Part shown: positions 10,022 through 59,769 of the stretch, one piece after another
Numbering within the stretch: position 1 is the stretch's first letter
Layout of the letters: each line of letters opens with the position of its first letter
Assembly (NCBI RefSeq): GCF_963676685.1
Contig: NC_092353.1
Location: 68,448,001-68,512,000 of the forward strand
Source of the DNA: Mytilus edulis
Lineage: Eukaryota
DNA: 64,000 nucleotides
Reading direction: 5' to 3'
Notes under the pieces: model-generated
Database searches by the model: none
Told to the model about the DNA's origin: nothing
The model's input: only the letters and a program-made list of their open reading frames with translations
Position numbers and translations under genes: made by a program

Positions 10022-11185
10022 ATGGACGATTCAGGAAAACTGCCTAATTTTGTGTTTCAGTATGTTTTGCCTCATTGTGTAGAAAATAAATTCATAAATA
10101 CTGCAATTGATAAAAAAAGTCAAGACCTGATAATAACAGAATTCATACCTCAATCAGACGGAACTAATAGAATTACCAGGAATGCAGTTCAAGTGCCAAA
10201 GGAAATAACTAGCAAGAGAATTATTGGTCAGCCCATTTGTATTGGGTGTAAAGGAAGTTTTTATGTTTTTCAATTTATTTGTACCACAGTTTCACACATA
10301 CAATTCTTCTCTGTGGACGTAGACAACAAATCGGTAAATGTATTTAAGGATTCTGTGTGTTATTTTAGTCGTGATATAATGACTGTGGCACCGGTAGAAT
10401 GTCACATTAGCACAGACAAGAAGCTTATATTACTAAGACTGCCACAAGCTGTGCTAAAACTAAATAGATATGCAAACATTCTCTTGACAGTGAATGGTGA
10501 AATGTGTAACATTGGCAAGTCAAAGCTGCATGACAAGAAATACACTTGTGTCAGATTTCTTCCACACTATCCAAGTCAACTATTGATGGTAGAATTTAAT
10601 AACATTTCATCAAAATGTCATCTACGAATATATGACATGACAACACAAGAAGTAAAAGCTGCCAAAGATCATTGTATAAATACATTCAGCATTGGTTATA
10701 TTGATGGAGATAACAGTGCAGACACCTGCTCGGAAGAAAATACAGTTATGTCCCTTTGTCAGACATCTCTATTGTATGATATAACTTGTGATTTAATAAT
10801 TCTAACTTGTTTTCCTACAGTTAACACATTTGTTGCAGTATTTGGTTTTAGAGCGGAGACCTTAGAGGCAACGTTTTCATTTAAAATCAATGTAAATCTA
10901 AAATGCAGCAAAACAAATGAACCGAAAACAAGTTTACTTGCTACAGAAATGTCGAACTGCAGTACTGTGGTGAATGTGTACAGGCTGTCAAAATCTCAAC
11001 AGAATAGTGGTTTGATTAAGCAGACAGTAACAACTGTTAAACTACCAGTTGTGCTCAATTTGAAATTCCAAGTAAGAGCTGTAATACTTCAACACTTTAC
11101 AGGAGACAAACTACAACTTGTGCTAGATGCATTACCAAAACCATTAAAGACTTATATTTTACTTGGTTATAATGAAACCGTATGA
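10022..11185 (+). CDS. SOCS-box-containing protein (387 aa, single coding exon), putative Elongin BC-Cul5 substrate adaptor with an uncharacterised beta-rich N-terminal region
   Basis: Long uninterrupted ORF in AT-rich DNA. C-terminus LPVVLNLKFQVRAVILQHFTGDKLQLVLDALPKPLKTYILLG fits the BC-box plus LPxP Cul5-box pattern. Splice acceptor tatttcag at about 9978, 43 nt before the ATG, implies a 5'UTR intron. Confidence 0.75.
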   Translation: MDDSGKLPNFVFQYVLPHCVENKFINTAIDKKSQDLIITEFIPQSDGTNRITRNAVQVPKEITSKRIIGQPICIGCKGSFYVFQFICTTVSHIQFFSVDVDNKSVNVFKDSVCYFSRDIMTVAPVECHISTDKKLILLRLPQAVLKLNRYANILLTVNGEMCNIGKSKLHDKKYTCVRFLPHYPSQLLMVEFNNISSKCHLRIYDMTTQEVKAAKDHCINTFSIGYIDGDNSADTCSEENTVMSLCQTSLLYDITCDLIILTCFPTVNTFVAVFGFRAETLEATFSFKINVNLKCSKTNEPKTSLLATEMSNCSTVVNVYRLSKSQQNSGLIKQTVTTVKLPVVLNLKFQVRAVILQHFTGDKLQLVLDALPKPLKTYILLGYNETV

Positions 11186-29300: not shown

Positions 29301-31077
29301 GAGAATGCCTGGACCAAGTAAGGAATATGACAGTTGTTGTCCATTCGTTTGATATGTTTTAACATTTGATTTTGCCATTTGATTAGGGACTTTCCGTTTT
29401 GAATTTTCCCCAGACATTTGTCAGAGTTCAGTATTTTTGTTATTTTACTTTTTACAAGCTGTTTATAAAACCTCATCTGAAAATTTCTTCCAAAATTAAT
29501 AGATATAGGAAGATGTGGTGTGAGTGCCAATGAGACAACTCTCCATTCAAATAACAATTAAGCAAAGATTTAAACATGTGAAAGCTCTCTCACGGGCAAA
29601 ACAACCAATAACTGAAAAATATAAGGGCATACACTAAACATTTTTTTTTATTATATTATGAATAAAAGCCTTTAAAGTTTTATTTAATTCACAATTATGA
29701 TTTAAATATTGATTGTTGGTTGCTTAACATCCACCTGTAAATATTTAATGCATGTTCAGGACAGCACAATTATGAAACTATATATACTGACAAATTGCTT
29801 GATCTCAAAGATTTTTTTTCTATTTCCATGCGAAACCATTTCACCATAAATGTATCAATCAATTATTGTTAAGGTGGTACCCAACACTTGCACTAAAATT
29901 AATTTGGGTCGTTTAATTTTCTTAAAATTTTGACAAAGTATTTACTTTGACCCTTTTACAAAAATATAAAAATTTCAAAAAATTTGAACCAACCGTTTTA
30001 TCAGAAAAATTACACTGGTTATATAGCAGTTTGACAAACACTTATTTTGATCATTGAGAAGCTTAATATTCTCTTAACAACACAACGTAATTAAAACGTT
30101 TAGCTGATTTTACAGAGTTATCTTCCTGTAGTGTTAGGTACCACCTTAAATGAATTCAAATATTTACCAAAAGCTTCTCAATAAATCCTGTTTCTCTCCC
30201 TACTCCATTGCTGTTGATGTGTGAATTGATCACTGGTGCTGTGGCTCTTTGAAATGACACGATTGCAGGATCTTGTGTGGACGGCTGGAAATTCTGATAT
30301 AACAAAAACATATTTTATCAAATTTCTTGTACAGGTTATAGATCATGTAGATTTGACATGTTTTAAAAATGTTGTGGGTTTTTTTTGTGTTTATTTTAAA
30401 GTGAAATTCTTTTAACAGTGTAGTGTACTACTTTTAAGACAATTTTTTCAAAACTATAAAATTTATATTTTCTACCACTCAGACTCAAAATATGGACAAT
30501 AATATGAATTAAAATTCAGTTTGATAGTTTCAGACATAATTTTTTTATCTTCTTCAACTCCACCAAATAATCACTTTAATTTACTTTAAAACTCCAAACC
30601 AAAATTTAAATGTAATTTCACCCAACCCTCTGCTATTCTACTTATTATTTTATATAAATGCATTATACATTTGGAATTTGTATGTAAAAAATGTACAAGT
30701 AACACATTTTCAATAATAGGAACTATATTTGTTTTCATCCAAAAAATCAAAAACTCTTCATAGATACCAGGATTGAAAGTTTTGCCAACTACTGCTAATC
30801 TATTCCCGAGGTTGAAAGTCCTATGTATTTGAAAAAATCAAAGTTTTGTAAGCAGTTAATTTATAATTATGACCACCAATGATATCAACAATAATTCATG
30901 TGAACACAGAAGTGCTGACTACTGGGCTTGTGATACCATCGGGAATAAAAACTCTACCTGCAGGCCAGTGACATTGACACAGTGGATGATAAATGTTTTC
31001 TTGGACCAAAATGAATCACTAATTTAAAATATACATGCCTTCCACTGAGGACTGTTCAACTTCTTTACAGCTGACAT
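14310..31077 (-). CDS. CSDE1: Cold shock domain-containing protein E1 (Unr), 17 coding exons, about 814 aa
   Basis: Exons in transcription order: 31039-31077, 30168-30293, 29140-29236, 28117-28277, 27063-27217, 26208-26409, 25707-25870, 24920-25091, 23490-23633, 20885-21026, 19971-20092, 18944-19116, 18357-18483, 17501-17612, 16742-16932, 15714-15877, 14310-14463. All phases are compatible and the total is 2445 nt. Five CSD RNP-like motifs ([90 protein letters not shown]) and a C-terminal SUZ-C motif [12 protein letters not shown]. The first coding exon is less certain because it uses a GC donor. Confidence 0.95.
14604..15429. mobile_element. Helentron/HINE-like element with 4 x 169-bp tandem repeats
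   Basis: Units start at 14681, 14850, 15019 and 15188, followed by (GACG)n and a terminal hairpin taggggaccgcctttggcgggacccta. Confidence 0.8.
17661..17903 (-). mobile_element. tRNA-derived SINE (V-domain-like), degenerate
   Basis: Reverse-complement homologue of 43343-43600, including the B-box gagttcaaatccc. Confidence 0.55.
19148..19335. repeat. ~22-bp minisatellite (agatatgagaaataacatggtt)
   Basis: About 8 degenerate tandem units just upstream of a CSDE1 acceptor. Confidence 0.7.
20631..20843. mobile_element. MITE with ACTGTGGATTCAT TIRs (Tc1/mariner-type)
   Basis: tactgtggattcatttattttcgtgggtaccaattt ... ttggtatccaacaaatatttatgaatccacagt. A split copy lies at about 39121-39154 plus 40659-40836. 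Confidence 0.75.
21455..22283 (-). mobile_element. Internally deleted Tc1-like DNA transposon with a pseudogenised transposase N-terminus
   Basis: TA-flanked TIRs TACTGAGCCAAAAAAG / CTTTTTTGGCTCAGTA. The minus frame from 21993 reads [47 protein letters not shown]...DR..., a Tc1 paired-like HTH with an internal stop and no DDE domain. Confidence 0.8.
24194..24870. mobile_element. Helentron/HINE-like element with 3 x 168-bp repeats
   Basis: Units at 24274, 24442 and 24610, a GACT/GACG microsatellite, and terminal hairpin tatacccccccctttttt...gcgggggtata. Confidence 0.8.
26853..27030. mobile_element. Short TIR element (MITE)
   Basis: tggccgtttcagaatctaaagcatcatgggtaat ... attacccaggatgcattagattatgaaacggcta. 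A fragment of the same end lies at about 14017-14060. Confidence 0.6.
29873..30145. mobile_element. 273-bp MITE with TTAA TSD (Kolobok-like)
   Basis: TTAA|GGTGGTACCCAACACT ... AGTGTTAGGTACCACC|TTAA. Confidence 0.85.
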
Positions 31078-31725
31078 AGTTGTTTTGTTTCCTTGGGAGT
31101 TTCCTAGTCCTCAGAAGTGCAGTCTGTGCAGTTAAGTTCTTTTATGGGCTTTTGTTGTTTATTTCTTCCTTTGTTTGTTTTGGTTTTTTTCTCAGTTTCT
31201 GATGCTGGGTGGTACTACATCTATGGGCTAAAATATGAAAAAAAAGAATGTGATTTTTTTTGGGTTGGTTATTTGATTAAGTTTTATTTGTTTGGTAATA
31301 AAAAAGTATAACCTAATTATTTTCAAGCTGAACTCACCAATTTACTAAAGAAGATTTACATGTTAAACAGCCGAGATTGATGTTTTGTGCAAAACATGGT
31401 ACAGTGTACATGTATATTAACCAAAATACATAAAAACTTGATTCCTGCCTCCTAACAGAAAAAATTGGGTACCAAGAAGGTAGGTGATTTTTTTTCTTTT
31501 ATTATATTACTTTGGAAATGCACTTGTCATCTTGTATAATATTAATATTTGTGTGTTGATTTTGACAGATCTGAACTTCCAGAAAATATACAAAACGTTC
31601 TGGAAATTCAAGTCTGTAAAATTTTAATGAGTTCTGAGTAAACAATTATTCTAAACTATTCTAAAGTGAAGGAATGTCAGAAATCCAGGAAACCATTCAT
31701 TGATATTCAATTCGCAACAGAAAAA

Positions 31726-43600: not shown

Positions 43601-45654
43601 TTTAAAATACACTCATATTTTCTTCAATTTGAAAATAGTACTATGAGGATTTCTTCCTATCCAAAGTAATAACTCTTGTTATATGTTGTTATTGAAATCC
43701 TATCTGGTATTAATTCTCAAATACAATTTTGCAAGATGTGAATATATATAATCCTAGTTATCAACTTACAAAAAAAGTATACTGATACAATTCTGAAATT
43801 AATACAGAGAAATGTAAAACATTAATTCCTGACTTCATTTATTTTAAAATAAATTATTGTATTTGTTTTGATAGTTATATTGTATCATAGTGTAAAGTTA
43901 TGTAAATAATTTTATATTGTGATTATTAAAGAGTCATTTGATAGATAACAGTTTTTTTGTTATATTTAAACTATTGACTGGTTGGTTGCCAATCTTTGTC
44001 TTTTTGAAATCAAACAGATGTCTTGACCATTTTTCTTGTTTTGTAAGTAGCCATAAAGCTGGTATCTAAGTTTTTACAACCACTGGATCATTGCCACAGC
44101 TGGATCATTGCCACACTGGATCATTGCCACAGCTGGATGCCAGAAAGTCCAAGATTGATGACATATCATTGATCTATTATATAGTCATTTTTATAAATTT
44201 ACTGTTTGCAAAAGTATGAATTATTCTAAATACTAAGGATGTTCTTATCCCAGACAGAAAACCTTAGCCGTATTAGGCATAAGTTTTGGAACTTTTGGTC
44301 CTCAATGCTCTTCAACTTTGTATTTGTTTTGGCTTACAATTTTTTTTTATCTGAGCGTCACTGGTTAGTCTTGTGAAGACGAAATCTGCATCGGGCGTAT
44401 TAAAATATAAACCTGGTACCTTTTGAAATCTATTATTTGTGTGTTTCTCTGTCCTATATGTTCTCCCATTTATTTGTATTGTAGTCCGGTCATGTAATGT
44501 TGTCATTTTAATGATATATTTAACATTGCCATAAAAGCGGGAGGTTTGGCTATCCACAAAACCATGTTCAACCCATCGCTTTTTCTCAAAATGTTATATA
44601 CCAAGTCAAGAAAATGGCCATTGCTATATTATAGTTCGTTTCTGAGTGTCTTACATTTAAGTGTTGTGTTTCTGTTGTGTCGTAGTTCTCTCATATTTGA
44701 TGTGTTTCCCTCAGTTTTAGTTTGTAACCATGATTTGTTTTTTTCTCAATTGATTTATGAATTTCGAACAGCGGTATACTACTGTTGCCTAAATTTATTG
44801 AAATAGATATAAGAAGATATGGTATGAGTGCCAATGAGACAACTCACAATTTGTAAAAAGTAAACCATTATACGTCAAAATACAGCCTTCAACACACAGC
44901 CTTTTGTCATTTTGTCATTTTCTGTAAATTCTGTATTTAAATTGAATTAACCCGGTATTCTAAACACTGAGGTTTTTCTAACCCCAGTCAAAAGATGGCC
45001 TTAGTCGTATTTGGTGGATTTTTTTCGAAATTTTAGGCCAACAAGGGCTCAGGGGCATTATGCTTTTTTGTTCTGTGGTTCCGTCCATCCATCTGTCGCT
45101 CTTCAGGTTAAAGTTTTAGGTCAGGGTTATTTTTGATGAAGTTGAAGTCCAATCAACTTGAAACGTAATACACTTGTTCCTTATGATATGATCTTCAAAA
45201 TATTTAGGTCAAATTAGAGTTTTTACCCCAAGTTCACGGTCCACTGAACATCGAAAATGATAATGCGAATAGAGTATCCGTGTACTACTAGTAATACTAC
45301 TATGAGCACATTCTTGATTCTTCATGCTTGAAGATATTGATTTTATAATTTGTATATAGTTGGTCATGACAAGTTACAGGCCAATTGCGAATTTTGATCT
45401 GGTATGATTATTTTATGCAGTTATGGTCCTTGGTCACTCAAGTAATCTTTTTCCACACTTATTTTCGTCATGCTTGAAGACTTTAATTTGATATAAAGTT
45501 TACACCATGATGAGTTATAGATCAATTTCGCATTTTGTTTCAGTGCAACGAATTCTTAACCGGCGGTTGTCTGTATTGCCAGTCAATACTCACAGAATGC
45601 TTGTTCACTTAGAGAAAAGTCAACAGTTAAGATTAAAATCTGCCCTTTTCCCCC

Positions 45655-49544: not shown

Positions 49545-49930
49545 ATTATAATCCTGGTACCTTTGATAACTATTTAAACCGCTGGGTCGATGCCACTGCC
49601 GGTGGGCGTTTCGTCCCCGAGGGTATAACCAGCCCAGTAGTCAGCTCTTCGGTGTTGACATGAATATCAATTATGTGGTCATTTTTATAAATTTCCTGTT
49701 AACAAAACTTTTAATTTTTCGAAAAAACTAGGATTTTCTTACCCCAGGCATAGATTACCTTGGCCGTATTTGGCACAATGTTTTGGTATTTTGGATCCTC
49801 AATGCTCTTCAACTTTGTATTTGTTTTGCTTTTATAACTATTTTGATATGAGCGTCAGTGATAAGTCTATTGTAGACGAAACGCGCGTCTGATGTACTTA
49901 ATTGTAATCCTGGTACCTTTGATAACTATT
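49545..49930 (+). repeat. ~356-bp retrozyme-like monomer with a degenerate hammerhead ribozyme motif
   Basis: Direct terminal repeat atcctggtacctttgataactatt at 49551 and 49907. Motif gagcgtca-GTGATAA-gtct-attgt-agac-GAAA-cgcgc resembles the hammerhead core CTGATGA/stem II/GAAA. Related copies at about 44160-44435, 48200-48580 and (reverse) 30760-31010. Confidence 0.6.
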
Positions 49931-50206: not shown

Positions 50207-51595
50207 TCACTCCACCTCTCCGATTGTCTTCTCTAATTCGTGTAAATGTTTTTCATCTACTACCTCAAGAAGATCTTCCGTCAAAAACTCTTCCGGATTC
50301 CTTATTATGTTGTCAATTTTCTTGAGTAAAGTTGATTGGATTGACTTGTGCTCTTTGATCCATTTTTTGTCATTTTCTGTAAGCTGTTTCTTGTATTGGC
50401 CTATTCCTTCCATGACATTTAAGGTCGGAATGAAATAGTGTGGACATACAAAATTTTCAATGCATTTCCGTAAGCTGCTCAGAAATGCTAGAAAGGCCAT
50501 ACCAGGGTACTCGGCAAATTGTTGAGGGTCCCGGGTTTCACACGCCCAAAGATAAATCGTCTTCAAGTGATATGATGTAAGACCGACACGCGCATCTCCG
50601 TTTTCCATCACCCCCATATCCAGATATTTTTTCTTTACTAGTTTGAGCAAAATGAAGAGAAACTTCTGATGAAAAGAAAACCTTGTTGTCAGTTGTTGTT
50701 CTGCTAGAGCAAATGTTATTTTCCACTGCAAAGGATAAACCAACATTGACGTTTTGTGTGTCAACAAGCAGCCATCTTGAACAATAGTGTCGACTACCTT
50801 TGTTTCCGGCCATTTTCTCTCGCGGTTCTGGAAGTCTGATAGTTTATGGGGCCATGGACCTTTGAGGGCAGAAACTTTATCAACTAGAATTTTGAATTTG
50901 AGTTCTCTTCCACCAACAATCATAGTCTCCGTGTTAGTTCGACATGTTCTATACAATGGCAACATTCGGATTGTTTCTAACGGTTCAATTTCAATCTCGC
51001 CTAAAATACTTGGATCTTCCTGTCGTGGAATTAAGCATGTATATCCTAACGATTTCAAATAAGTTTTGCCATTCCAAAGTTTTTTGAAAAATTTCCACCT
51101 TTGACCTGCATCTACTTCATCAATATCACTGGTTACCTGTACTAAACATGCACCCATTGGCAGTTCAATTTGTCTATTTTTGTCATCCATAAAATCCATC
51201 TGAACTGTTATAAAAGGCTGTTTTTCAGTTGGTACAACAAAATTAGGTTCTTCTCTATTATACAGAACACTCGCCTCGTCACTCTCAGAATAAATTGGAA
51301 GGGCAGCATTTGGCATTTCTCGGTTATACAAAACATCAACTTCAACTAGGTAAGACCCGTCCGGCATGACCTCAGGGAAGTACAGCTCGTTACCTACACT
51401 ACCAACAACTGTTACTGTATCATAAGGTCTTTGTTTTCTGTAATCTACAACTTTCTGGTGAACATAATCAAGGACAGGCTTTATTTCTTTTACCTTATTC
51501 GCTGCTCTTTCCATCAAGAAAAGTAATCTTTTATCTAGATTTTCGGTACTTCTTATATCTAACCCAATTGAAAACTCCTCTGGTAAGCTCGTCAT
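50207..51595 (-). CDS. Mab-21 / cGAS-like receptor (cGLR) nucleotidyltransferase, paralog A (462 aa)
   Basis: NTase motif VVGS(65-66)...EVD(85,87), third acidic residue in ILVDKVSAL (D239). Mab-21 signatures WP...RERKWP...IVQDGCLLTHK, WKITFALAE, SYHLKTIYLWACE, CPHYFIPTLN. Acceptor ttttcag 60 nt upstream of the ATG with an in-frame stop in between. Confidence 0.92.
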   Translation of the reverse strand: MTSLPEEFSIGLDIRSTENLDKRLLFLMERAANKVKEIKPVLDYVHQKVVDYRKQRPYDTVTVVGSVGNELYFPEVMPDGSYLVEVDVLYNREMPNAALPIYSESDEASVLYNREEPNFVVPTEKQPFITVQMDFMDDKNRQIELPMGACLVQVTSDIDEVDAGQRWKFFKKLWNGKTYLKSLGYTCLIPRQEDPSILGEIEIEPLETIRMLPLYRTCRTNTETMIVGGRELKFKILVDKVSALKGPWPHKLSDFQNRERKWPETKVVDTIVQDGCLLTHKTSMLVYPLQWKITFALAEQQLTTRFSFHQKFLFILLKLVKKKYLDMGVMENGDARVGLTSYHLKTIYLWACETRDPQQFAEYPGMAFLAFLSSLRKCIENFVCPHYFIPTLNVMEGIGQYKKQLTENDKKWIKEHKSIQSTLLKKIDNIIRNPEEFLTEDLLEVVDEKHLHELEKTIGEVE

Positions 51596-52608
51596 GTTGA
51601 CTCTTTCTTGGCGCCCTTCTTCGTATACTCTGAATCAGTGCAACTTTTGATGGTACTGAAAATATAAATAATTTTACTACTCAGCAGGCTTATATATGTA
51701 TATGTGTATAGATATTTTTTCTAATATAAATATTCATCAAGTTTTCGTAAATATGAAATCGTACTTAAACGCAGGTGGGTGTAACCAAGTTGACATTCAA
51801 ACTCATAATTCGAAGAAAAACTACATGCCAACTAAAGAAAAACTACGAAACGAGTCTAACAAACTCTACATGAAACGACGTTAAACTGTGACATATCGGG
51901 AAAAATGATTTTTTCGACTGAATTTAATCATTCAAAATGATTTAACTTGACAACGAGTCCATGGGCCCCTCTTTTTTAAAATAACATTAGGTTTGATTAC
52001 GTGTGAAGATTATATGTACCAATTTTTAATGAAAAGGTCACTGATAAATTGTTTTTTATATAACCTTAAGCTCGAGTGACTATACTAGTATACTGCATTC
52101 AATTTTAAAACAAGGATCTTGAAACTATATGAAATCAGTTCTTTCCAGAAGTATATTGCCGTTAACAAACTTTTTTCAAATATACAGCAAAAACTGCCGT
52201 TTTCTTTCTAAAATTATGAAACTTTGATGAAAAATAATTATTTCCAAAAAATTGTTATACAAATTTAAAAATGTTTACAAATATACGCTTGTGCTTATCT
52301 AAGAAACAAAAAGTAAGGTCTATCTGTTCAAGGATTTGTATAGTATATATATACAAATCCTTTGGGTTTTTTCAAGGGATAGAAATGTAAATAAAACCCC
52401 AGAAATTTTGAGTAAACGTGCTAACATTTTGACCCCATTCATATCTTAAAATATTACAAAAAAGTATTGTTCTATTGCATATTAATTTTGAACTAACAAG
52501 GTAATTATATATATAATATGCACATTTTTCATTAAAAAATAACCGTGGGACAAAAACTGTACTGTATGCCCATAATTTGCATTATCGTTTTCCAAAAAAT
52601 GTACTTAC

Positions 52609-52675
52609 TGTTGAAGATAACAGACATCAGCATCAGCTTTTTTATTATTTGTTTACTTTCGTTTTGTTTATATAT
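52609..52675 (-). promoter_or_regulatory. Putative promoter and non-coding first exon of cGLR paralog A
   Basis: Minus strand reads TATATAAA-c-aAAACGAAAGTA...CTGATGctGAT...tgttatcttcAACA|GTAAGT. This is a strong donor and is homologous to the element at 58751-58820. Confidence 0.6.
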
Positions 52676-53239
52676 CCTTGAACTTAGGCTACAATACATA
52701 TACTACACTAAGCATATAATAAGTTTAAAATCATTCGGTTGAGATAACACAAATCGATGACTTTATGGTGCGTCATAAATCATAAAAATGAATGTTTTTT
52801 GCTTGAGATATTATGTCTAAGCATTAATAACACAAACGTCGTAAACACATTAATTTGAGAATATTTTGTTTCTAAAATGCATCATCTTAATAAATCTAGT
52901 ATCCAGTGGAAAGTAAAATAAAAAAAAAATACTGAACTCCGAGCAAAATCCAAACGGAAAGTCAACACGTAACTAGTTTTTTGCCGTCTTCTTTATCTTA
53001 AGTTTTAAACCTTTACCTCGAGTTACTATACTAGTTTCCTGCATTCAAGTTTGAAGCCAGGATCTCAAAACTATATTAAAACAGTTCTTTCCAGAAGTAT
53101 AAAGCCGTCAACACTTTTTCAAACCCCAACACGTTCAGTCTGAATATACTATGAAAACCTGATAGGCACAATTACGAGCCTCAACTGAAATACAAGTTGT
53201 AAATAACATATCATCTTTAGTATGAGTATTCACTTATTA

Positions 53240-53565
53240 ACCTTACTTTCCGCTATATAGATGATGTTCTCTCACTAAATAATTCAAAATTTGGTGACTA
53301 TGTTGAACGCATCTATCCAATCGAACAAGAGATAAATGATACAATTAAGTCTGCCTCATATGTTGACTTACACCTAGAAATTGACAATGAAGGTAGGTTG
53401 AAAATAAAATTTTACGGCAAACGATATGAGTTTAGCTTCCCAATTGCGAACTTTCCATTACTGCATACGGAGTATAATAATATCTCCCAATTGATACGAT
53501 ATTCTTGTATTTCCTATCATGATTTCCTTGATAGAGGGTTCAAATAGTGAAGTTGAAGTTATCCC
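53240..53565 (+). mobile_element. Penelope-like element reverse transcriptase fragment
   Basis: TFRYIDDVLSLNNSKFGDYVERIYPIEQEINDTIKSASYVDLHLEIDNEGRLKIKFYGKRYEFSFPIANFP, containing the YIDD RT motif, then truncated. Confidence 0.8.
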
Positions 53566-54690
53566 GTCTATATATTTACTGATTCCGTTCTTATCCCTAT
53601 TAAGCTATTGTAACAGTATTGCGTTAACTTTATATTTGCATGTCGGACAATGCTTGTCAACGCAACCTATCTCATTCTATTTGGAGTTCATGTGATTCTC
53701 GTTATTTTTTGTAGCTTAATTTGTATATTTTTGCTGGATTTACGAGATTTAAAGATCGACAAGGGACGTAGTCTCTTCCTCATAAACAGAGCACGGACCT
53801 GACTCGAAAAATGCCCGAGGAGTGTAATGAAGAATGAACAACTGCAATTCTCTTAACATGATTTACCGTAATAAAACGTATACTGGTTAACCGAAACAAT
53901 GTGTCTTTGACTCTATTTTTATTTATTTATGCATATCATTTTAGCTTTGTCAATAGACTATGGTTTCCTTGATTAAAAAAAAGAATCAAAACCCCTCCAC
54001 CAATTTAGTATAAACATGATATATATATATAAATACGTCTTAAACAGTGTGGGAAAAGTATGAGCTAATTCAATGACAAATAAAAAATAACAGAAGATTA
54101 GTTATTCGATATTCAAACCTCTGACACATACTGTGAAGGTACAAATCAATGTAAGAAATTTGGAATCACAAGATCCTCAAAGGAACGAGACTGTGCGCGT
54201 CTACTGCAATGAGTGAGTGTCATACTTTAACAAACAAAAAAAGACGTTTGCAAAACCCAAAATGATAATCCACTCAGTAAAAATATTCCAATTAAAAATA
54301 GGACTCGATCGACAAATTGACAAGTAAGAAAAATATTCATGTATTTAGAACAGACAGCGAAAACATGCAACTAGTCAATTGACGAATTCGTGATCACTGT
54401 AAAACGTTTGCAGCGACTATTTCATTGGTCTAGAACTCTGTTGGAGCAGTATGAATAGCATCCGTACCAATGAAGTCCGTATAGTGTGAACGAGCACATT
54501 TATTATTCGTTTTTCTCACTTTTACTGTCATCACAATATGTAAAAAGAAAAACAAAGAAAAAAGAAAAAAGAACGATCAATTGTGATATTTGAAAATAAA
54601 AAAAATCATTTAGAATAAATAAATTCACGATTCGAAGTAAATGATTTTGTTCATATTTAGCACCTTTCAATTTCACACATAGTGAAAACC

Positions 54691-56076
54691 CTATTGTTCA
54701 TCTCCAATTGTCCTTTGTAGCAGATGTATATGAGTTTCATCTATTTCATCAAGAATATCGTCGGTCAAGAAATTTTCAGGCTTCTGCATTAAAATACTAA
54801 TTTGTCGGAGTGTAATGTTTTGGAGCATTTTCCGCTTATGCGTCCATCCTTCAATTTCTTCTTCTGTAGGCGGTCTCTTATATTGTTTAAGTCCTTCCAT
54901 GACATTTAATGTTGAAATGAAAAAGTGCGGACAGTCGTAAAATTCAATGCATTTCTTCAACTTCTTCAGAAAAACTAAATAGCATATACCTGGATGATGA
55001 ATAAACTGTTGAGGATCCGTGGCTTCACACATCCATAGATAAATTGTCTTCAAGTGGTATGATGTTAAACCCACAATCGGTACTCCATTTTCCATTAAAC
55101 CCATGTCCAGATACTTCTTCTTCACTTGTTTGATCAATATGAACAAATATTTCTGATGAAATGAAAACGTTTTTGTCAGTTGTTGTTCTGCTAGCGAAAA
55201 TGTAATTTTCCACTGCAAAGGATAAACCTGCAGTGATGGCTTGTGTGTCAACAAGCAACCATCCTTGACAATACTTTCTACTATCTTTGTTTCTGGCCAT
55301 TTTCTCGCGCGGCTCTGGAAATCTGACAGCATATTAGGCCAAGGACCTTTTAGAGCAGAAACTTTGTCAACCAAAATTCTAAATGTAAGCTCTCTTCCAT
55401 CAACAAGCATAGTATCCATCTCAGTTCTACATGTCCTATACAACTGCAAAATTTTTGCCTTTTCCAATGGTTCAATTTCAATCTCCCCTAAAATACTCGG
55501 ATCTTCCTGTCGTGGAATTAGGCATGTATATCCCAAAGATTTCAAGTAAGTTTTACCATTCCAAAGTTCTTTGAAAAACTTCCACCTCTGACCTTTTTCC
55601 ACTTCATCAATGTTACCGGTAACCTCTACTAAGCATGCCCCTATTGGCAAAGTCACTATTTTGTTTTCGTCATTCATGAAATCCATCTTAACGGTTATAA
55701 CAGGCGGCTTTTCAGTAGGCATGACAACACGCGTTTTTTCTCTGGTATACAGAACATCATCAGGAGGCATATACATGGGAAGGATAGCATTTGGCATTTC
55801 TCTGTTATACAACACATCTACCTCTATCAAATAAGAACCGTCCGGCATGACCTCGGGAATGTAAAGCTCGTTTCCTACACTACCAACCACTGTTACTGTA
55901 TCGTAAGGTCTTTGCTTTCTATAATCTGCAACTTTCTGATGAACATAATCTGTGATAGGCGCTACTTCTTTGACTTTCTTTGCTGCTTTGTCCATTAAGA
56001 AAAGTAATCGTTTATCGAGACTTTCAGTGCTTCTTACATCAAGGTTAGTTGTAAAATCCTCTGTTAAATTTGCCAT
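54691..56076 (-). CDS. Mab-21 / cGAS-like receptor (cGLR) nucleotidyltransferase, paralog B (461 aa)
   Basis: Colinear paralog of 50207-51595 with the same GS / E85-D87 / D237 residues and the motifs SYHLKTIYLWMCE and CPHFFISTLN. Homologous acceptor (tttcag|tacc) 51 nt upstream of the ATG with an in-frame stop. Confidence 0.92.
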   Translation of the reverse strand: MANLTEDFTTNLDVRSTESLDKRLLFLMDKAAKKVKEVAPITDYVHQKVADYRKQRPYDTVTVVGSVGNELYIPEVMPDGSYLIEVDVLYNREMPNAILPMYMPPDDVLYTREKTRVVMPTEKPPVITVKMDFMNDENKIVTLPIGACLVEVTGNIDEVEKGQRWKFFKELWNGKTYLKSLGYTCLIPRQEDPSILGEIEIEPLEKAKILQLYRTCRTEMDTMLVDGRELTFRILVDKVSALKGPWPNMLSDFQSRARKWPETKIVESIVKDGCLLTHKPSLQVYPLQWKITFSLAEQQLTKTFSFHQKYLFILIKQVKKKYLDMGLMENGVPIVGLTSYHLKTIYLWMCEATDPQQFIHHPGICYLVFLKKLKKCIEFYDCPHFFISTLNVMEGLKQYKRPPTEEEIEGWTHKRKMLQNITLRQISILMQKPENFLTDDILDEIDETHIHLLQRTIGDEQ

Positions 56077-58750
56077 GCTATTGAACTCTTTCTTAGAAAA
56101 CTTGAATCGATGAAACTACTGAAGGTACTGAAAGTATAAACAAATTACAGAATGTACTGATATTCCTTTCTAACATTAAAGATTCTTTGGCAAAAATACA
56201 ATCTATATAAACTGTGAAATTCTATTGATGTTAAACCTAAAACTGCAAAACTCGGATCCAGCCATTTTTAAAAGGGGGTTCCAATCATATGTCCTCTTTC
56301 AAACGCATTGATCGTCAATCCTGAATGTTGTAACACACATACTCTAAAAATGTGTGCTTGTTGTAATAGCATCACAAATGAAATGCAAATAGTGCCCTGT
56401 TAAAGATAAGTTAAGTCCTATATGAAATTGTGTTAATTTTCAATATGATATTTTAAAATGAAATCCGTCCATCTATTTGAAAAGAAAATATCAATAAATA
56501 TTTAATATACTTAGTAGAACATTTTCAACTGTCCTTCCAATTATAGTGGACATATTTCTCTTTTTGGTTGCTTATGTACTCTATAAGATAGTTTTTTTTT
56601 AAATATTATTTTACAGATTCTTGAAATAACGATATGCTACAAAAGGAACAGACAGAACTTATTTTTTTACATTCCGTACCTGTAACTGACAAGAAAGCTA
56701 AATAAAGCGCAAGAAACAATCATTGACAAAAGAAATGTTGCTTTTCAAAACATACTAGTATATATTTCTATCATGTATTTTTTTTATTATATTAATTTCA
56801 CCAAATTGATTACATATATAATTGATATATGTAACATTTGCCACTGGATCACATACCCTTACCCAATCAATTTCTTATACCTAACATATGTGTATTTCTT
56901 CTCTTATGACAGCAATCAACCTAGTGTTCCGTTTTATATTTGATTTTAAAAACTTGATATAATTGGTTTTATTTTATACAGTAATTACAGAAAAAAACTA
57001 TAATAAACACTGTCAGTAACTTTCTTTCAAACAAGGTAGTGATAAGAGCTTATTTTGTCTTCTTTCTGTGGCTCATTAACAACATATTCCAAAATTTCAT
57101 CATATTTTCACCGGTTCCATCTGTTGCACTTTAATTTTCCCTCAATTATTTGAAATAACTTTTTGTGTGTATGTTTGCTCTTGATTTATAGACATCTGTG
57201 CTTTAGTCATTGTTCTTTGTACAGTATATAAACTGTATAGTGCGTGAAAACTGCTCACTAAGTATTAAACTAAAGGCTAGCTTAACCTCAAACCTAATGA
57301 GTGTTACTGTTGTAGGCTCTTTTCACAGAAATTCTTAATGAAAATGAATGAATTTATTTTACAATTTATCTGAATGTAATCAGTGAATCTGTAAAAAAGA
57401 TCTTAATTATTTCAGGGATTTTGTAAAATCACCAGTCAAAATCAGGGATTTTATGAAATCCCTAATCAGTTCAGTGATTTTACAAATTCCCATAAATTTC
57501 AGTGATTTTACAAAATCCCCGATTTCACAAATTCCCTGTAACATATATACATATTTGTTTAGGGGCCAGCTGAAGGACGCCTCCCGGTGCGAGAGTTTCT
57601 CGCTGCATTGAAGACCCATTGCTGGCCTTCGGTTGTTGTCTGCTCTATGGTCGGGTTGTTGTCTCTTTGACACATTCCCCATTTCCATTCTCAATTTATA
57701 AGTCTTTTTGTAAAAGAGGGTCAAAAGCAAACATTCTCCTCATTAAGCCTGCAAAATGCTTAGATAAAGTAAATATGTTTTGTGCTAAATAGAAATATAT
57801 CTATGAATCTTAGTTAAACTGAAATAACAATATTATATTAGAATACGAAGATATCCCTTAAAATAAACTACTATTTGTGATTTTGTTTTATAAAGTGGGT
57901 AAGGTAAAGTTTAATTTATTAAAACTCACTAACCCCATGTTAGGAACTTATTCATTAAGGTTATCTGCAAAATTTTGGTAAGTTGATTATCACTTGTGTA
58001 TAGATATAGGTAGATGTGGTACGATTGCTAATGATCGAGACAACTCTCCATCCAAGTAACAATTTATAAAAGTAAACCATTATAGGTCAAGGTACGGCCT
58101 TCAACACGAAGCTATGGCTCACACCGAACAGCAAGCTATAAAGGGCCCCAAAAATTACTAGTGCAAAATTATTCAAACGGGAAAACCAACGGTCTAATCT
58201 ATATAAAAACGAAAAACGAGAAACACTTATGGACCACATAAACAGACGACAACCACTGAACATCAGATTCCTGAGTTAGGACAGGTGCAAACAATTGCAG
58301 CGGGATTCAACGTAATGGTACCAAATCTTCTCCCTTTTTCTGAATCAATAGTAGAACATCACAACATAGAAAGACACACTATAAAATATCAATTGGAATG
58401 ACTTAACTCAATCAAAAAACGTAATTACACAAATTGACACACAATGAACGAATAAATTTGATCTGTGATACAATGTAAATACATAGTTAATAAAAATAAA
58501 GGATGATTAAAGTAAAAGTATAAAAACTGTACCCAGAAGACAAGTCCTTTCGACCCTTTTGCCTTGCAATTGTTATCTTTTGTTACAGGAACCGTTGGAA
58601 AACTCATTCAAATAAATAGTGTGCTCATTGTTTAAACTACTCATTCGGAATGCAGAAAAAAATTGTCTCCTATTTCATTTGTCGTTAAAGTATTCAAACT
58701 TTTTTTTTTTAATTTCTTTTACAATCCTTGATTGTAAAATGAAAACTTAC

Positions 58751-58822
58751 TGTTATGAATAGCAAATGATCTCCATCAGTATCTATATTGTTTCCGGTTT
58801 AGTTTAAGTACTTTCGTTTATG
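58751..58822 (-). promoter_or_regulatory. Putative promoter and non-coding first exon of cGLR paralog B
   Basis: Minus strand reads AAACGAAAGTA...aaCCGGAAac...CTGATGgaGAT...tgctattcatAACA|GTAAGT, homologous to 52609-52675. Confidence 0.6.
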
Positions 58823-59769
58823 ATGTAAACATGCAGGTCCTTGAACTCATCAAATGTTAAAAAACAACATAATTATATACTTATATACATAATTCGTTAC
58901 ACTTTATTCGGTTCACAACACATATATCAGATGGAATGCATGGAAAATTAGATCATGCATTGTGAATTAATTGTACCTTTATTACATTATGTATTGTTCT
59001 CTGCTATATCTGTTGTTTTGTCATGTCGTATATATATTGTTTATGTATTGCCATAGCATGTTTATGCTTTTGCAAATAAAATATGCATTCATACATTCAT
59101 TAATAGATTATTCATTATGTAAAAATTATTTTGGGACGATTTTTTAAAATTAATTACTATCATCAACTATGGGCATATTTTCTTTTATAATGATTCGTGT
59201 TTTTGCTTAAATTTAAATAAAATCTATTCCCACAGGCGACAGTTGTTCTATTTTGACTGTATATCTGAACCCTGTCTGTCTCATTGACATTAACAATTTG
59301 AATTTTAAGCTCAAGTGTTAGTGCGGCATAATGTCGAAATGATAAAATTAATAGTATATGGTATATGAACCACTAGCCGGTGTTTCTTATTTCACAAAAT
59401 ATAACCTTTGAAATCGGTAGACAACAGATTTTAAATCCAAGGTTTTTTTTAAGTCAGAATATAGAAAGAAATCTGGTAGGATGAATTAATCCTCACAACT
59501 TAAAGTAAAACTATTGACAAAATGTATTCTTTTCGTCCGAGTTTTGATTGAGAATTGTGTACTTTTAAAAAAAATAAAATTATCCTCTTAACATGCTTAA
59601 ATTTTGGTCTTTTGTGGATAGTTGTCTCATTGGCAATCATACCACATCTTCTTTTTTATATTAACAATAGTAGACTACAAAAGTTACTAGCTATATGTAG
59701 TTTATTGAAACTCATCAACTTATGTAATGAACGTATTGAAAAAAAGTTTCTCTGCATAATAACCTAAAT

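What the first reader, a model, noticed from the sequence alone, without database searches (positions are those of the whole stretch)
52600..58825. Both cGLR paralogs keep a homologous non-coding leader exon with an identical IRF-element-like 11-mer (AAACGAAAGTA)
Seen: about 1.0 kb (A) and 2.6 kb (B) upstream of the homologous acceptors (ttcag|tacc at 51655 and 56127) are two short segments that align on the minus strand: AAACGAAAGTA (52654-52664; 58809-58819) ... CTGATGnnGAT ... AACA|GTAAGT (donors at 52608 and 58750). I see no similarity between the surrounding introns, so this looks like a phylogenetic footprint. A has an adjacent TATATAAA and B has an ETS-like CCGGAA. Established: IRF factors bind AANNGAAA(GT), and vertebrate cGAS is itself an interferon-stimulated gene. 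Inference: the whole transcription unit was duplicated and both receptors are IRF-inducible, giving a possible cGLR-STING-IRF feed-forward loop in a mollusc.
Basis: partly seen in the sequence, partly recalled or inferred. Interest (0 to 1): 0.8.

Follow-up and report, generated by a model that had tools for sequence, protein, structure and literature searches.

The report
Shared non-coding first exon of two cGLR genes
Two neighbouring mussel cGAS-like receptor genes each kept a short non-coding first exon from their common ancestor, and RNA confirms the predicted splice for one of them. The shared 11-letter "IRF-like" word lies inside that transcribed exon and there is no evidence yet that it is an IRF switch.

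Summary
AAACGAAAGTA occurs only twice in the window, at the stated places. It belongs to a colinear chain shared by both genes: AGTTCAAGGA, the 11-mer, CTGATGnnGAT, AACA|GTAAGT. The first two blocks together occur nowhere else in the 1.37-Gb genome. Neither leader is a dispersed repeat. The introns, upstream flanks and 3' flanks show no homology.

RNA contigs from two runs join 52609 to 51655, exactly the predicted intron of gene A. For gene B, a contig piece stops exactly at the predicted acceptor 56127 with 72 unplaced letters. Those letters do not lie in 56128-57399.

New here:
- The RNA contigs reach 52663/52666, so the 11-mer is transcribed and sits about 2-3 nt from the contig 5' ends. 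A's TATATAAA is therefore too close to be a -30 TATA box for these transcripts.
- Both leaders carry a conserved upstream ATG.

The IRF reading is untested and weak. There is one half-site of a type common here (AANNGAAA, 2.6 per kb) and no tandem ISRE. Simple drift gives such exact runs in 2-16% of trials.

Verdict: the conserved leader exon and duplicated transcription unit are supported. IRF inducibility is speculative.

The parts
52675..52684 (-). Gene A: conserved block AGTTCAAGGA, -18 to -9 from the RNA-contig 5' end. It is either core promoter or the very start of the transcript.
52667..52674 (-). Gene A: TATATAAA, not shared with B. It abuts the contig 5' end, so it is not a -30 TATA box for the observed transcripts.
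52609..52666 (-). Gene A non-coding exon 1, minimum extent. The X1 contig has 58 letters 5' of the acceptor, 34 of them aligned. The X2 contig aligns over 52617-52663.
52654..52664 (-). Gene A: 11-mer AAACGAAAGTA (IRF half-site-like), inside the transcribed leader
52626..52636 (-). Gene A: CTGATGCTGAT block with upstream ATGs at 52633 and 52627. The uORF from 52633 crosses the splice and overlaps the main ATG out of frame.
51656..52608 (-). Gene A intron 1 (953 nt, GT..AG on the minus strand), confirmed by RNA contigs
   Evidence: joint 51655->52609 (CT..AC on the + strand); X2 shows the same splice with a SNP and a 2-nt insertion
50207..51655 (-). Gene A exon 2: 60-nt 5' UTR (51596-51655) plus the 462-aa Mab-21/cGLR ORF (50207-51595)
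58838..58847 (-). Gene B: conserved block AGTTCAAGGA
58751..58822 (-). Gene B non-coding exon 1, predicted. Its 72 nt equal the 72 unplaced letters 5' of 56127 in an X1 contig.
   Evidence: inference
58809..58819 (-). Gene B: 11-mer AAACGAAAGTA
58753..58779 (-). Gene B: CTGATGGAGAT block (58769-58779) and a 7-codon uORF, MEIICYS* (58776-58753), wholly inside the leader
56128..58750 (-). Gene B intron 1, predicted (2623 nt). It holds a high-copy repeat of about 730 nt at 56823-57554.
54691..56127 (-). Gene B exon 2: 51-nt 5' UTR (56077-56127) plus the 461-aa Mab-21/cGLR ORF (54691-56076). An RNA contig piece ends exactly at 56127.

Best explanation
Each of the two tandem cGLR (Mab-21 family) genes is a two-exon unit: a short non-coding exon 1 (at least 58 nt in A, about 72 nt in B) spliced to one exon that holds the rest of the 5' UTR and the whole ORF. 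The homology island of about 100 nt upstream of each gene is the start-site region plus exon 1, inherited when the whole unit was duplicated (dS about 0.76). It has been kept while introns and flanks decayed. Transcription most likely starts at or a few nt upstream of the CA that precedes the 11-mer, so AAACGAAAGTA forms the first bases of the mRNA. AGTTCAAGGA lies at about -10 to -25. I infer that the blocks are kept for three reasons. AGTTCAAGGA and the 11-mer would serve initiation or start-proximal control, with the factor unknown and IRF one candidate. The CTGATG block would keep an upstream ATG that damps translation of the receptor. AACA|GTAAGT is the splice donor. Shown: the splice in A, the exon 2 start in B, transcription of the 11-mer in A, the uniqueness of the island and the uATGs. 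Inferred: the exact TSS, the identity of the B leader and the function of any block.
For: The A junction 52609>51655 is present in contigs of X1 (exact) and X2 (a polymorphic allele). Depth is zero in the intron bin 52400-52599, and no contig covers sequence upstream of 52663/52666. The B contig piece ends exactly at 56127 with 72 more letters and no joint into 56128-57399. 72 nt from the predicted donor reaches 58822, 3 nt before the 11-mer. A's 58 nt reach 52666, 2 nt before it. The leaders are reciprocal best matches and the only extra-exonic homology. The two-block promoter pattern (AGTTCAAGGA then the 11-mer) is unique genome-wide. The leader segments are single-copy, and protein A finds only the two gene loci as close matches, so there is no sign of a retrocopy. 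A conserved uATG sits in both leaders. dS is 0.76 and dN/dS 0.24.
Against: Contig ends are not mapped TSSs. 24 of X1's 58 leader letters were not aligned. The raw RNA runs X21 and X24 gave no reads on either leader. Overall leader identity (0.57 of all columns) is no higher than that of the exon-2 UTR (0.59). Indel-free drift at 61-70% identity gives one run of 11 or more together with one run of 10 or more in 2-16% of trials. Constraint on the individual blocks is therefore likely but not proven.
Confidence: 0.7

Rival explanations
1. One reading: the 11-mer is an IRF-binding element (IRF-E/ISRE type) that makes both receptors inducible by IRFs, closing a cGLR-STING-IRF feed-forward loop.
For: AAACGAAAGT fits the IRF monomer core AANNGAAA followed by GT. 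It is identical in both paralogs and start-proximal. The genome encodes IRF DNA-binding domains at three loci (two neighbouring groups of matches at one of them) and has a STING ligand-binding-domain match. Oyster IRF2 and IRF8 activate mammalian ISRE and IFN-beta reporters (PMC5557890). An oyster cGAS/STING-TBK1-IRF axis has been reported (PMC8218723).
Against: Only one GAAA half-site is present. No GAAANNGAAA, STAT or NF-kB consensus lies within about -400 to +150 of either start. AANNGAAA occurs 2.6 times per kb here, and the 11-mer is not enriched genome-wide (2038 against 3187 for the reversed control). The site is inside the transcript. There are no induction data. Contigs of 14 probable RNA runs (the tool's guess, none on record as RNA) from 11 studies hold a quarter to a third of the sampled words, about what the two mRNAs would give. 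That hints at basal expression but was checked in only two runs.
Confidence: 0.2
2. The blocks act at the RNA level. The leader is a translational control module (uORF and 5'-terminal sequence) that keeps receptor protein low, and DNA-binding factors are irrelevant to its conservation.
For: All blocks from the 11-mer onward are transcribed in A. A conserved uATG lies in the CTGATG block. B has a 7-codon uORF. A has a uORF that overlaps the main ATG out of frame.
Against: uORF length, stop position and peptide are not conserved. The uATG context is weak (C at -3). AGTTCAAGGA may lie upstream of the TSS. No ribosome or reporter data exist.
Confidence: 0.25
3. Apart from the splice donor, the identical blocks are chance survivors of neutral decay in a homologous leader and have no specific function.
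For: The two exact runs arise in 2% (61% identity) to 16% (70% identity) of indel-free drift simulations. Leader identity is about the same as exon-2 UTR identity. Only one pairwise comparison is available, because no other close paralog exists.
Against: The adjacent intron, the upstream sequence and the 3' UTR have lost all detectable homology. The 11-mer contains a CpG, the kind of site expected to decay fast where DNA is methylated (general knowledge). The blocks lie at functionally meaningful places: the start site, the uATG and the donor.
Confidence: 0.12

Closest known systems
Vertebrate cGAS as an interferon-stimulated gene with promoter ISREs (recalled from memory, not checked here)
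   Same: A nucleotidyltransferase sensor of the same superfamily, with a GAAA-type element near its start site. A positive feedback loop is conceivable.
   Different: Vertebrate ISREs are tandem GAAANNGAAA elements upstream of the TSS and have been shown to respond to IFN. Here there is a single half-site inside the 5' leader, with no induction or binding data.
Oyster cGAS/STING-TBK1-IRF axis and oyster IRF2/IRF8 acting on ISRE reporters (PMC8218723, PMC5557890)
   Same: Bivalves have IRFs that can drive GAAA-repeat elements and a cGAS-STING pathway upstream of them. The same components are encoded in this genome.
   Different: In the passages read here (term searches only), those papers neither map IRF sites in bivalve cGLR promoters nor show that a cGLR gene is an IRF target.
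Ordinary conserved 5' UTR exon with uORF in tandemly duplicated genes
   Same: A short non-coding exon 1, GT-AG intron 1, the ORF in a single downstream exon, an upstream ATG, and an island of similarity at the start site while introns diverge.
   Different: Nothing unusual found. This is the class into which the verified part of the finding falls.

Membership tests
Non-coding 5' leader exon (5' UTR exon) | Spliced by a GT-AG intron to the exon carrying the start codon | tested here: met
   Gene A: joint 51655->52609 with CT..AC on the + strand in X1, and the same splice in X2. Gene B: only the acceptor end is confirmed, by a piece ending at 56127 with 72 unplaced letters.
Non-coding 5' leader exon (5' UTR exon) | Contains no part of the main ORF | tested here: met
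   The main ATGs at 51595 and 56076 lie in exon 2. The leaders hold only short or out-of-frame uORFs.
ISRE / IRF-E (IRF-binding element) | IRF core AANNGAAA | tested here: met
   AAACGAAA is present in both leaders, but this core occurs 168 times in 64 kb.
ISRE / IRF-E (IRF-binding element) | Tandem GAAA repeats (GAAANNGAAA), as in functional ISREs | tested here: not met
   No GAAANNGAAA or RAAANNGAAA within 52500-53100 or 58650-59250.
ISRE / IRF-E (IRF-binding element) | Bound by an IRF protein, and confers induction by virus, dsRNA or cyclic dinucleotides | not testable with these tools
   No binding or induction data. The raw RNA runs gave no reads on the leaders.
TATA-box promoter (gene A) | TATA element about 25-31 nt upstream of the TSS | tested here: not met
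   TATATAAA at 52667-52674 lies 1-8 nt from the contig 5' ends at 52666 and 52663. A minor downstream TSS is not excluded.
cGLR / Mab-21 nucleotidyltransferase family (the two ORFs) | Mab-21 NTase and Mab-21_C domains above the Pfam cut-offs | tested here: met
   PF03281 scores 26.6 and 25.6 bits and PF20266 scores 48 and 39.6 bits, against a cut-off of 24.1. The best PDB match is 8gjy, cGAS-like receptor 1, E 2.6e-12.
cGLR / Mab-21 nucleotidyltransferase family (the two ORFs) | Intact catalytic acidic triad and signal synthesis | not tested
   Outside this finding. The N-terminal NTase core was not aligned to solved cGLRs here.
Dispersed repeat / transposable element | Many copies in the genome | tested here: not met
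   Each leader has only its self-hit in 1.37 Gb.

The most novel reading that the evidence does not exclude
The 11-mer at the transcript start is a genuine IRF (or other immune transcription factor) site shared by both receptors. These bivalve cGLRs would then be induced by their own downstream pathway, a cGLR-STING-IRF positive feedback that arose independently of, or before, the vertebrate cGAS interferon-stimulated-gene loop.
Probability: 0.15. Interest if true: 0.6.

Novelty: new member of a known kind. Interest (0 to 1): 0.3.

Why it matters
The verified part gives correct two-exon gene models, approximate start sites and 5' UTRs with upstream ATGs for two uncharacterised mussel cGLRs. 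That helps anyone cloning them or building promoter reporters. It also defines a short (about 100 nt), genome-unique candidate regulatory island that can be tested directly. If the 11-mer proved to be an IRF site, it would be a first mapped cis-element linking IRFs to cGLR expression in a lophotrochozoan. As it stands, this is an ordinary conserved leader exon with an unproven motif.

Tried and rejected
- The single read-laying run is limited to 6,000 letters. The loose-end letters at 56127 were not among the rows printed.
- The raw RNA runs X21 and X24 gave almost only repeat-derived reads, with none on the leaders.
- The dispersed-repeat explanation is rejected.
- A chance match is rejected.
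- An alternative B first exon inside 56800-57399, where RNA contigs pile up, is rejected. That stretch is a high-copy repeat, and no joint links it to 56127.
- The bacterial-type promoter scan is irrelevant to a eukaryotic gene and is ignored.
- Footprinting with more paralogs was not possible, because the next Mab-21 genes share only about 36% identity over half the protein.
- Motif enrichment upstream of the roughly 90 other Mab-21 genes was not attempted. Their start sites are unknown and the copies are not independent.
The uORFs were read exon by exon.
- Pfam scans of three other window ORFs gave nothing.
Full report
**What is in the sequence**

Two single-ORF genes lie on the minus strand: A (50207-51595, 462 aa) and B (54691-56076, 461 aa). 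Both carry Mab-21 and Mab-21_C domains above the Pfam cut-offs. The best solved relative of A is 8gjy, 'cGAS-like receptor 1' (E 2.6e-12).

Their DNA aligns at 76.5% from 50217-51674 to 54701-56146. That span covers the ORF, 51-60 nt of 5' UTR and about 20 nt of polypyrimidine tract upstream of identical TTCAG|TACC acceptors. dS is about 0.76 and dN/dS about 0.24. The window is C10:68448001-68512000 of a 1.37-Gb genome. A and B are each other's only close paralogs. The next of about 90 Mab-21 hits share about 36% identity over the C-terminal half.

**The observation**

The 11-mer AAACGAAAGTA is present exactly twice in the window, at the stated coordinates. Genome-wide it occurs 2038 times against 3187 for the reversed control, about 0.1 expected per 64 kb. 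Two copies in homologous positions therefore cannot be chance.

It is one block of a colinear chain:
- the 11-mer
- CTGATGnnGAT
- AACA|GTAAGT

Each leader is the other's best local match in the whole window on both strands (z about 6 and 5.3). Sliding 110-nt tiles of the A locus over the window shows colinear matches to B only for exon 2 and for the tile 52600-52709. Intron 1, the upstream flank and the 3' flank show none. Both leaders are single-copy in the genome. The two-block pattern AGTTCAAGGA-N5-30-AAACGAAAGTA occurs only at these two loci.

**RNA evidence**

The look-up of sequencing runs listed 14 probable RNA runs, kept as contigs, from 11 studies. The tool guesses they are RNA; none is on record as such.

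Gene A:
- X1 has a contig with a joint 51655->52609 that skips 953 nt with CT..AC ends on the + strand, which is GT..AG on the minus strand. This is exactly the predicted intron.
- X2, which carries another organism label, shows the same splice in a polymorphic allele. The 13 'between' letters equal the window's junction sequence with one SNP in exon 2 and a 2-nt AT insertion in the leader.
- Depth is zero in the intron bin 52400-52599. The leader bin's depth equals just these two contigs. The runs therefore behave as RNA.

Gene B:
- An X1 contig piece ends exactly at 56127 and has 72 more letters at its 5' side.
- No joint links 56127 to anything in 56128-57399, so the B leader lies further upstream.
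- The contig depth seen at 56800-57399 is explained by a high-copy repeat of about 730 nt at 56823-57554.

The raw RNA runs X21 and X24 gave no reads on either leader.

**Where the motif sits**

X2's contig aligns over 52617-52663. X1's contig has 58 letters 5' of the acceptor, of which 34 aligned, so it would start at 52666. The 11-mer (52654-52664) is therefore transcribed, 2 nt from the contig's 5' end. For B, 72 letters from the predicted donor reach 58822, 3 nt before its 11-mer. Both would begin with CA.

The agreement of the two contig ends at homologous positions supports both the identity of the B leader and a start site at or just upstream of the 11-mer. This is inference, because contig ends are not mapped TSSs.

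Two consequences follow. A's TATATAAA (52667-52674) lies at -8 to -1 and cannot be the -30 TATA box of these transcripts. B's CCGGAA lies inside the predicted leader.

**Is the 11-mer an IRF site?**

It fits the minimal monomer core AANNGAAA followed by GT. That core occurs 168 times in the window (2.6 per kb), and AANNGAAAGT occurs 12 times. Neither promoter region has a tandem GAAANNGAAA ISRE, a STAT site or an NF-kB consensus within about -400 to +150.

The pathway components exist. IRF DNA-binding-domain matches lie at three loci, with two neighbouring groups at one of them, and there is a STING ligand-binding-domain match. Oyster IRF2 and IRF8 activate mammalian ISRE and IFN-beta reporters (PMC5557890). 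An oyster cGAS/STING-TBK1-IRF axis has been described (PMC8218723). None of this bears on these two genes directly, and I found no induction data for them. A mussel haemocyte poly(I:C) study does not mention cGAS, Mab-21 or STING.

**How strong is the footprint?**

Only one pairwise comparison is available. Over all alignment columns the leader is 57% identical and the exon-2 UTR 59%. Intron ends score 49-53% and the first 100 nt after the stop codon 37% under the same gap-tolerant scoring. In indel-free drift simulations over 100 columns, a run of 11 or more together with a second run of 10 or more appears in:
- 0.1% of trials at 52% identity
- 2% at 61% identity, the identity at fourfold sites
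- 16% at 70% identity

Constraint on the island is likely, since everything around it has decayed. A discrete, selected 11-nt site is not demonstrated.

**Additional feature**

The CTGATG block is a conserved upstream ATG. In B it opens a 7-codon uORF (MEIICYS*, 58776-58753) that ends 2 nt before the donor. In A the uORF from 52633 runs across the splice and overlaps the main ATG out of frame, stopping about 60 nt beyond it (read exon by exon). The leader may therefore also damp translation.

**Conclusion**

The verified result is an ordinary but well-supported one. The whole two-exon transcription unit was duplicated. The start-site region plus non-coding exon 1 was retained in both copies. 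Intron 1 of B later grew, in part through a repeat insertion.

The most likely working model has three parts:
- AGTTCAAGGA and the 11-mer form the initiation or start-proximal control region, with the factor unknown and IRF one candidate at about 0.2.
- The uATG block modulates translation.
- AACA|GTAAGT is the donor.

The feed-forward loop remains a hypothesis.

Other first-reader notes in this genome also propose ISRE-like sites beside cGLRs (s1-839004, s1-832414, s1-839173, s1-834864). They are unchecked and I did not use them as support.

Noticed in passing
window 56823-57554: A dispersed repeat of about 730 nt sits inside intron 1 of gene B. It shares 85-88% identity with copies on many chromosomes, with 9880 first-look candidates. 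Its first 140 nt or so also match in inverse orientation about 0.6-0.8 kb from many of those copies, which suggests inverted terminal repeats of a longer element. It accounts for part of the intron's extra length and for the RNA-contig depth there.
   Followed up: partly
window 52062-52167 and 53008-53113: A 106-nt direct repeat (85% identity, spacing 946 nt) brackets the gene A leader and promoter. One copy is in intron 1 and the other about 340 nt upstream of the start. Its origin is unknown.
   Followed up: no
window 52800-52999, 53200-53599, 56200-56399: Very high summed contig depth (hundreds to about 1200) and many loose ends appear in all four runs. These are probably expressed high-copy repeats between and inside the two genes.
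   Followed up: no
window 54542-54573: Raw RNA reads of X21 pile up on a 30-nt A/T-rich core, with poly-A loose ends on both sides and 'goes back' joints. This is a low-complexity artefact in the gene B 3' UTR region. The X2 contig of gene B ends at 54535, about 155 nt after the stop codon.
   Followed up: no
window 49600-49909 against 30601-31200 and 44001-44600: The 3' flank of gene A matches other places in the window strongly (scores above 100). This is another repeat family just downstream of the gene.
   Followed up: no
window 10022-11185 (+): A 387-aa ORF with no Pfam match. It was not examined further.
   Followed up: partly
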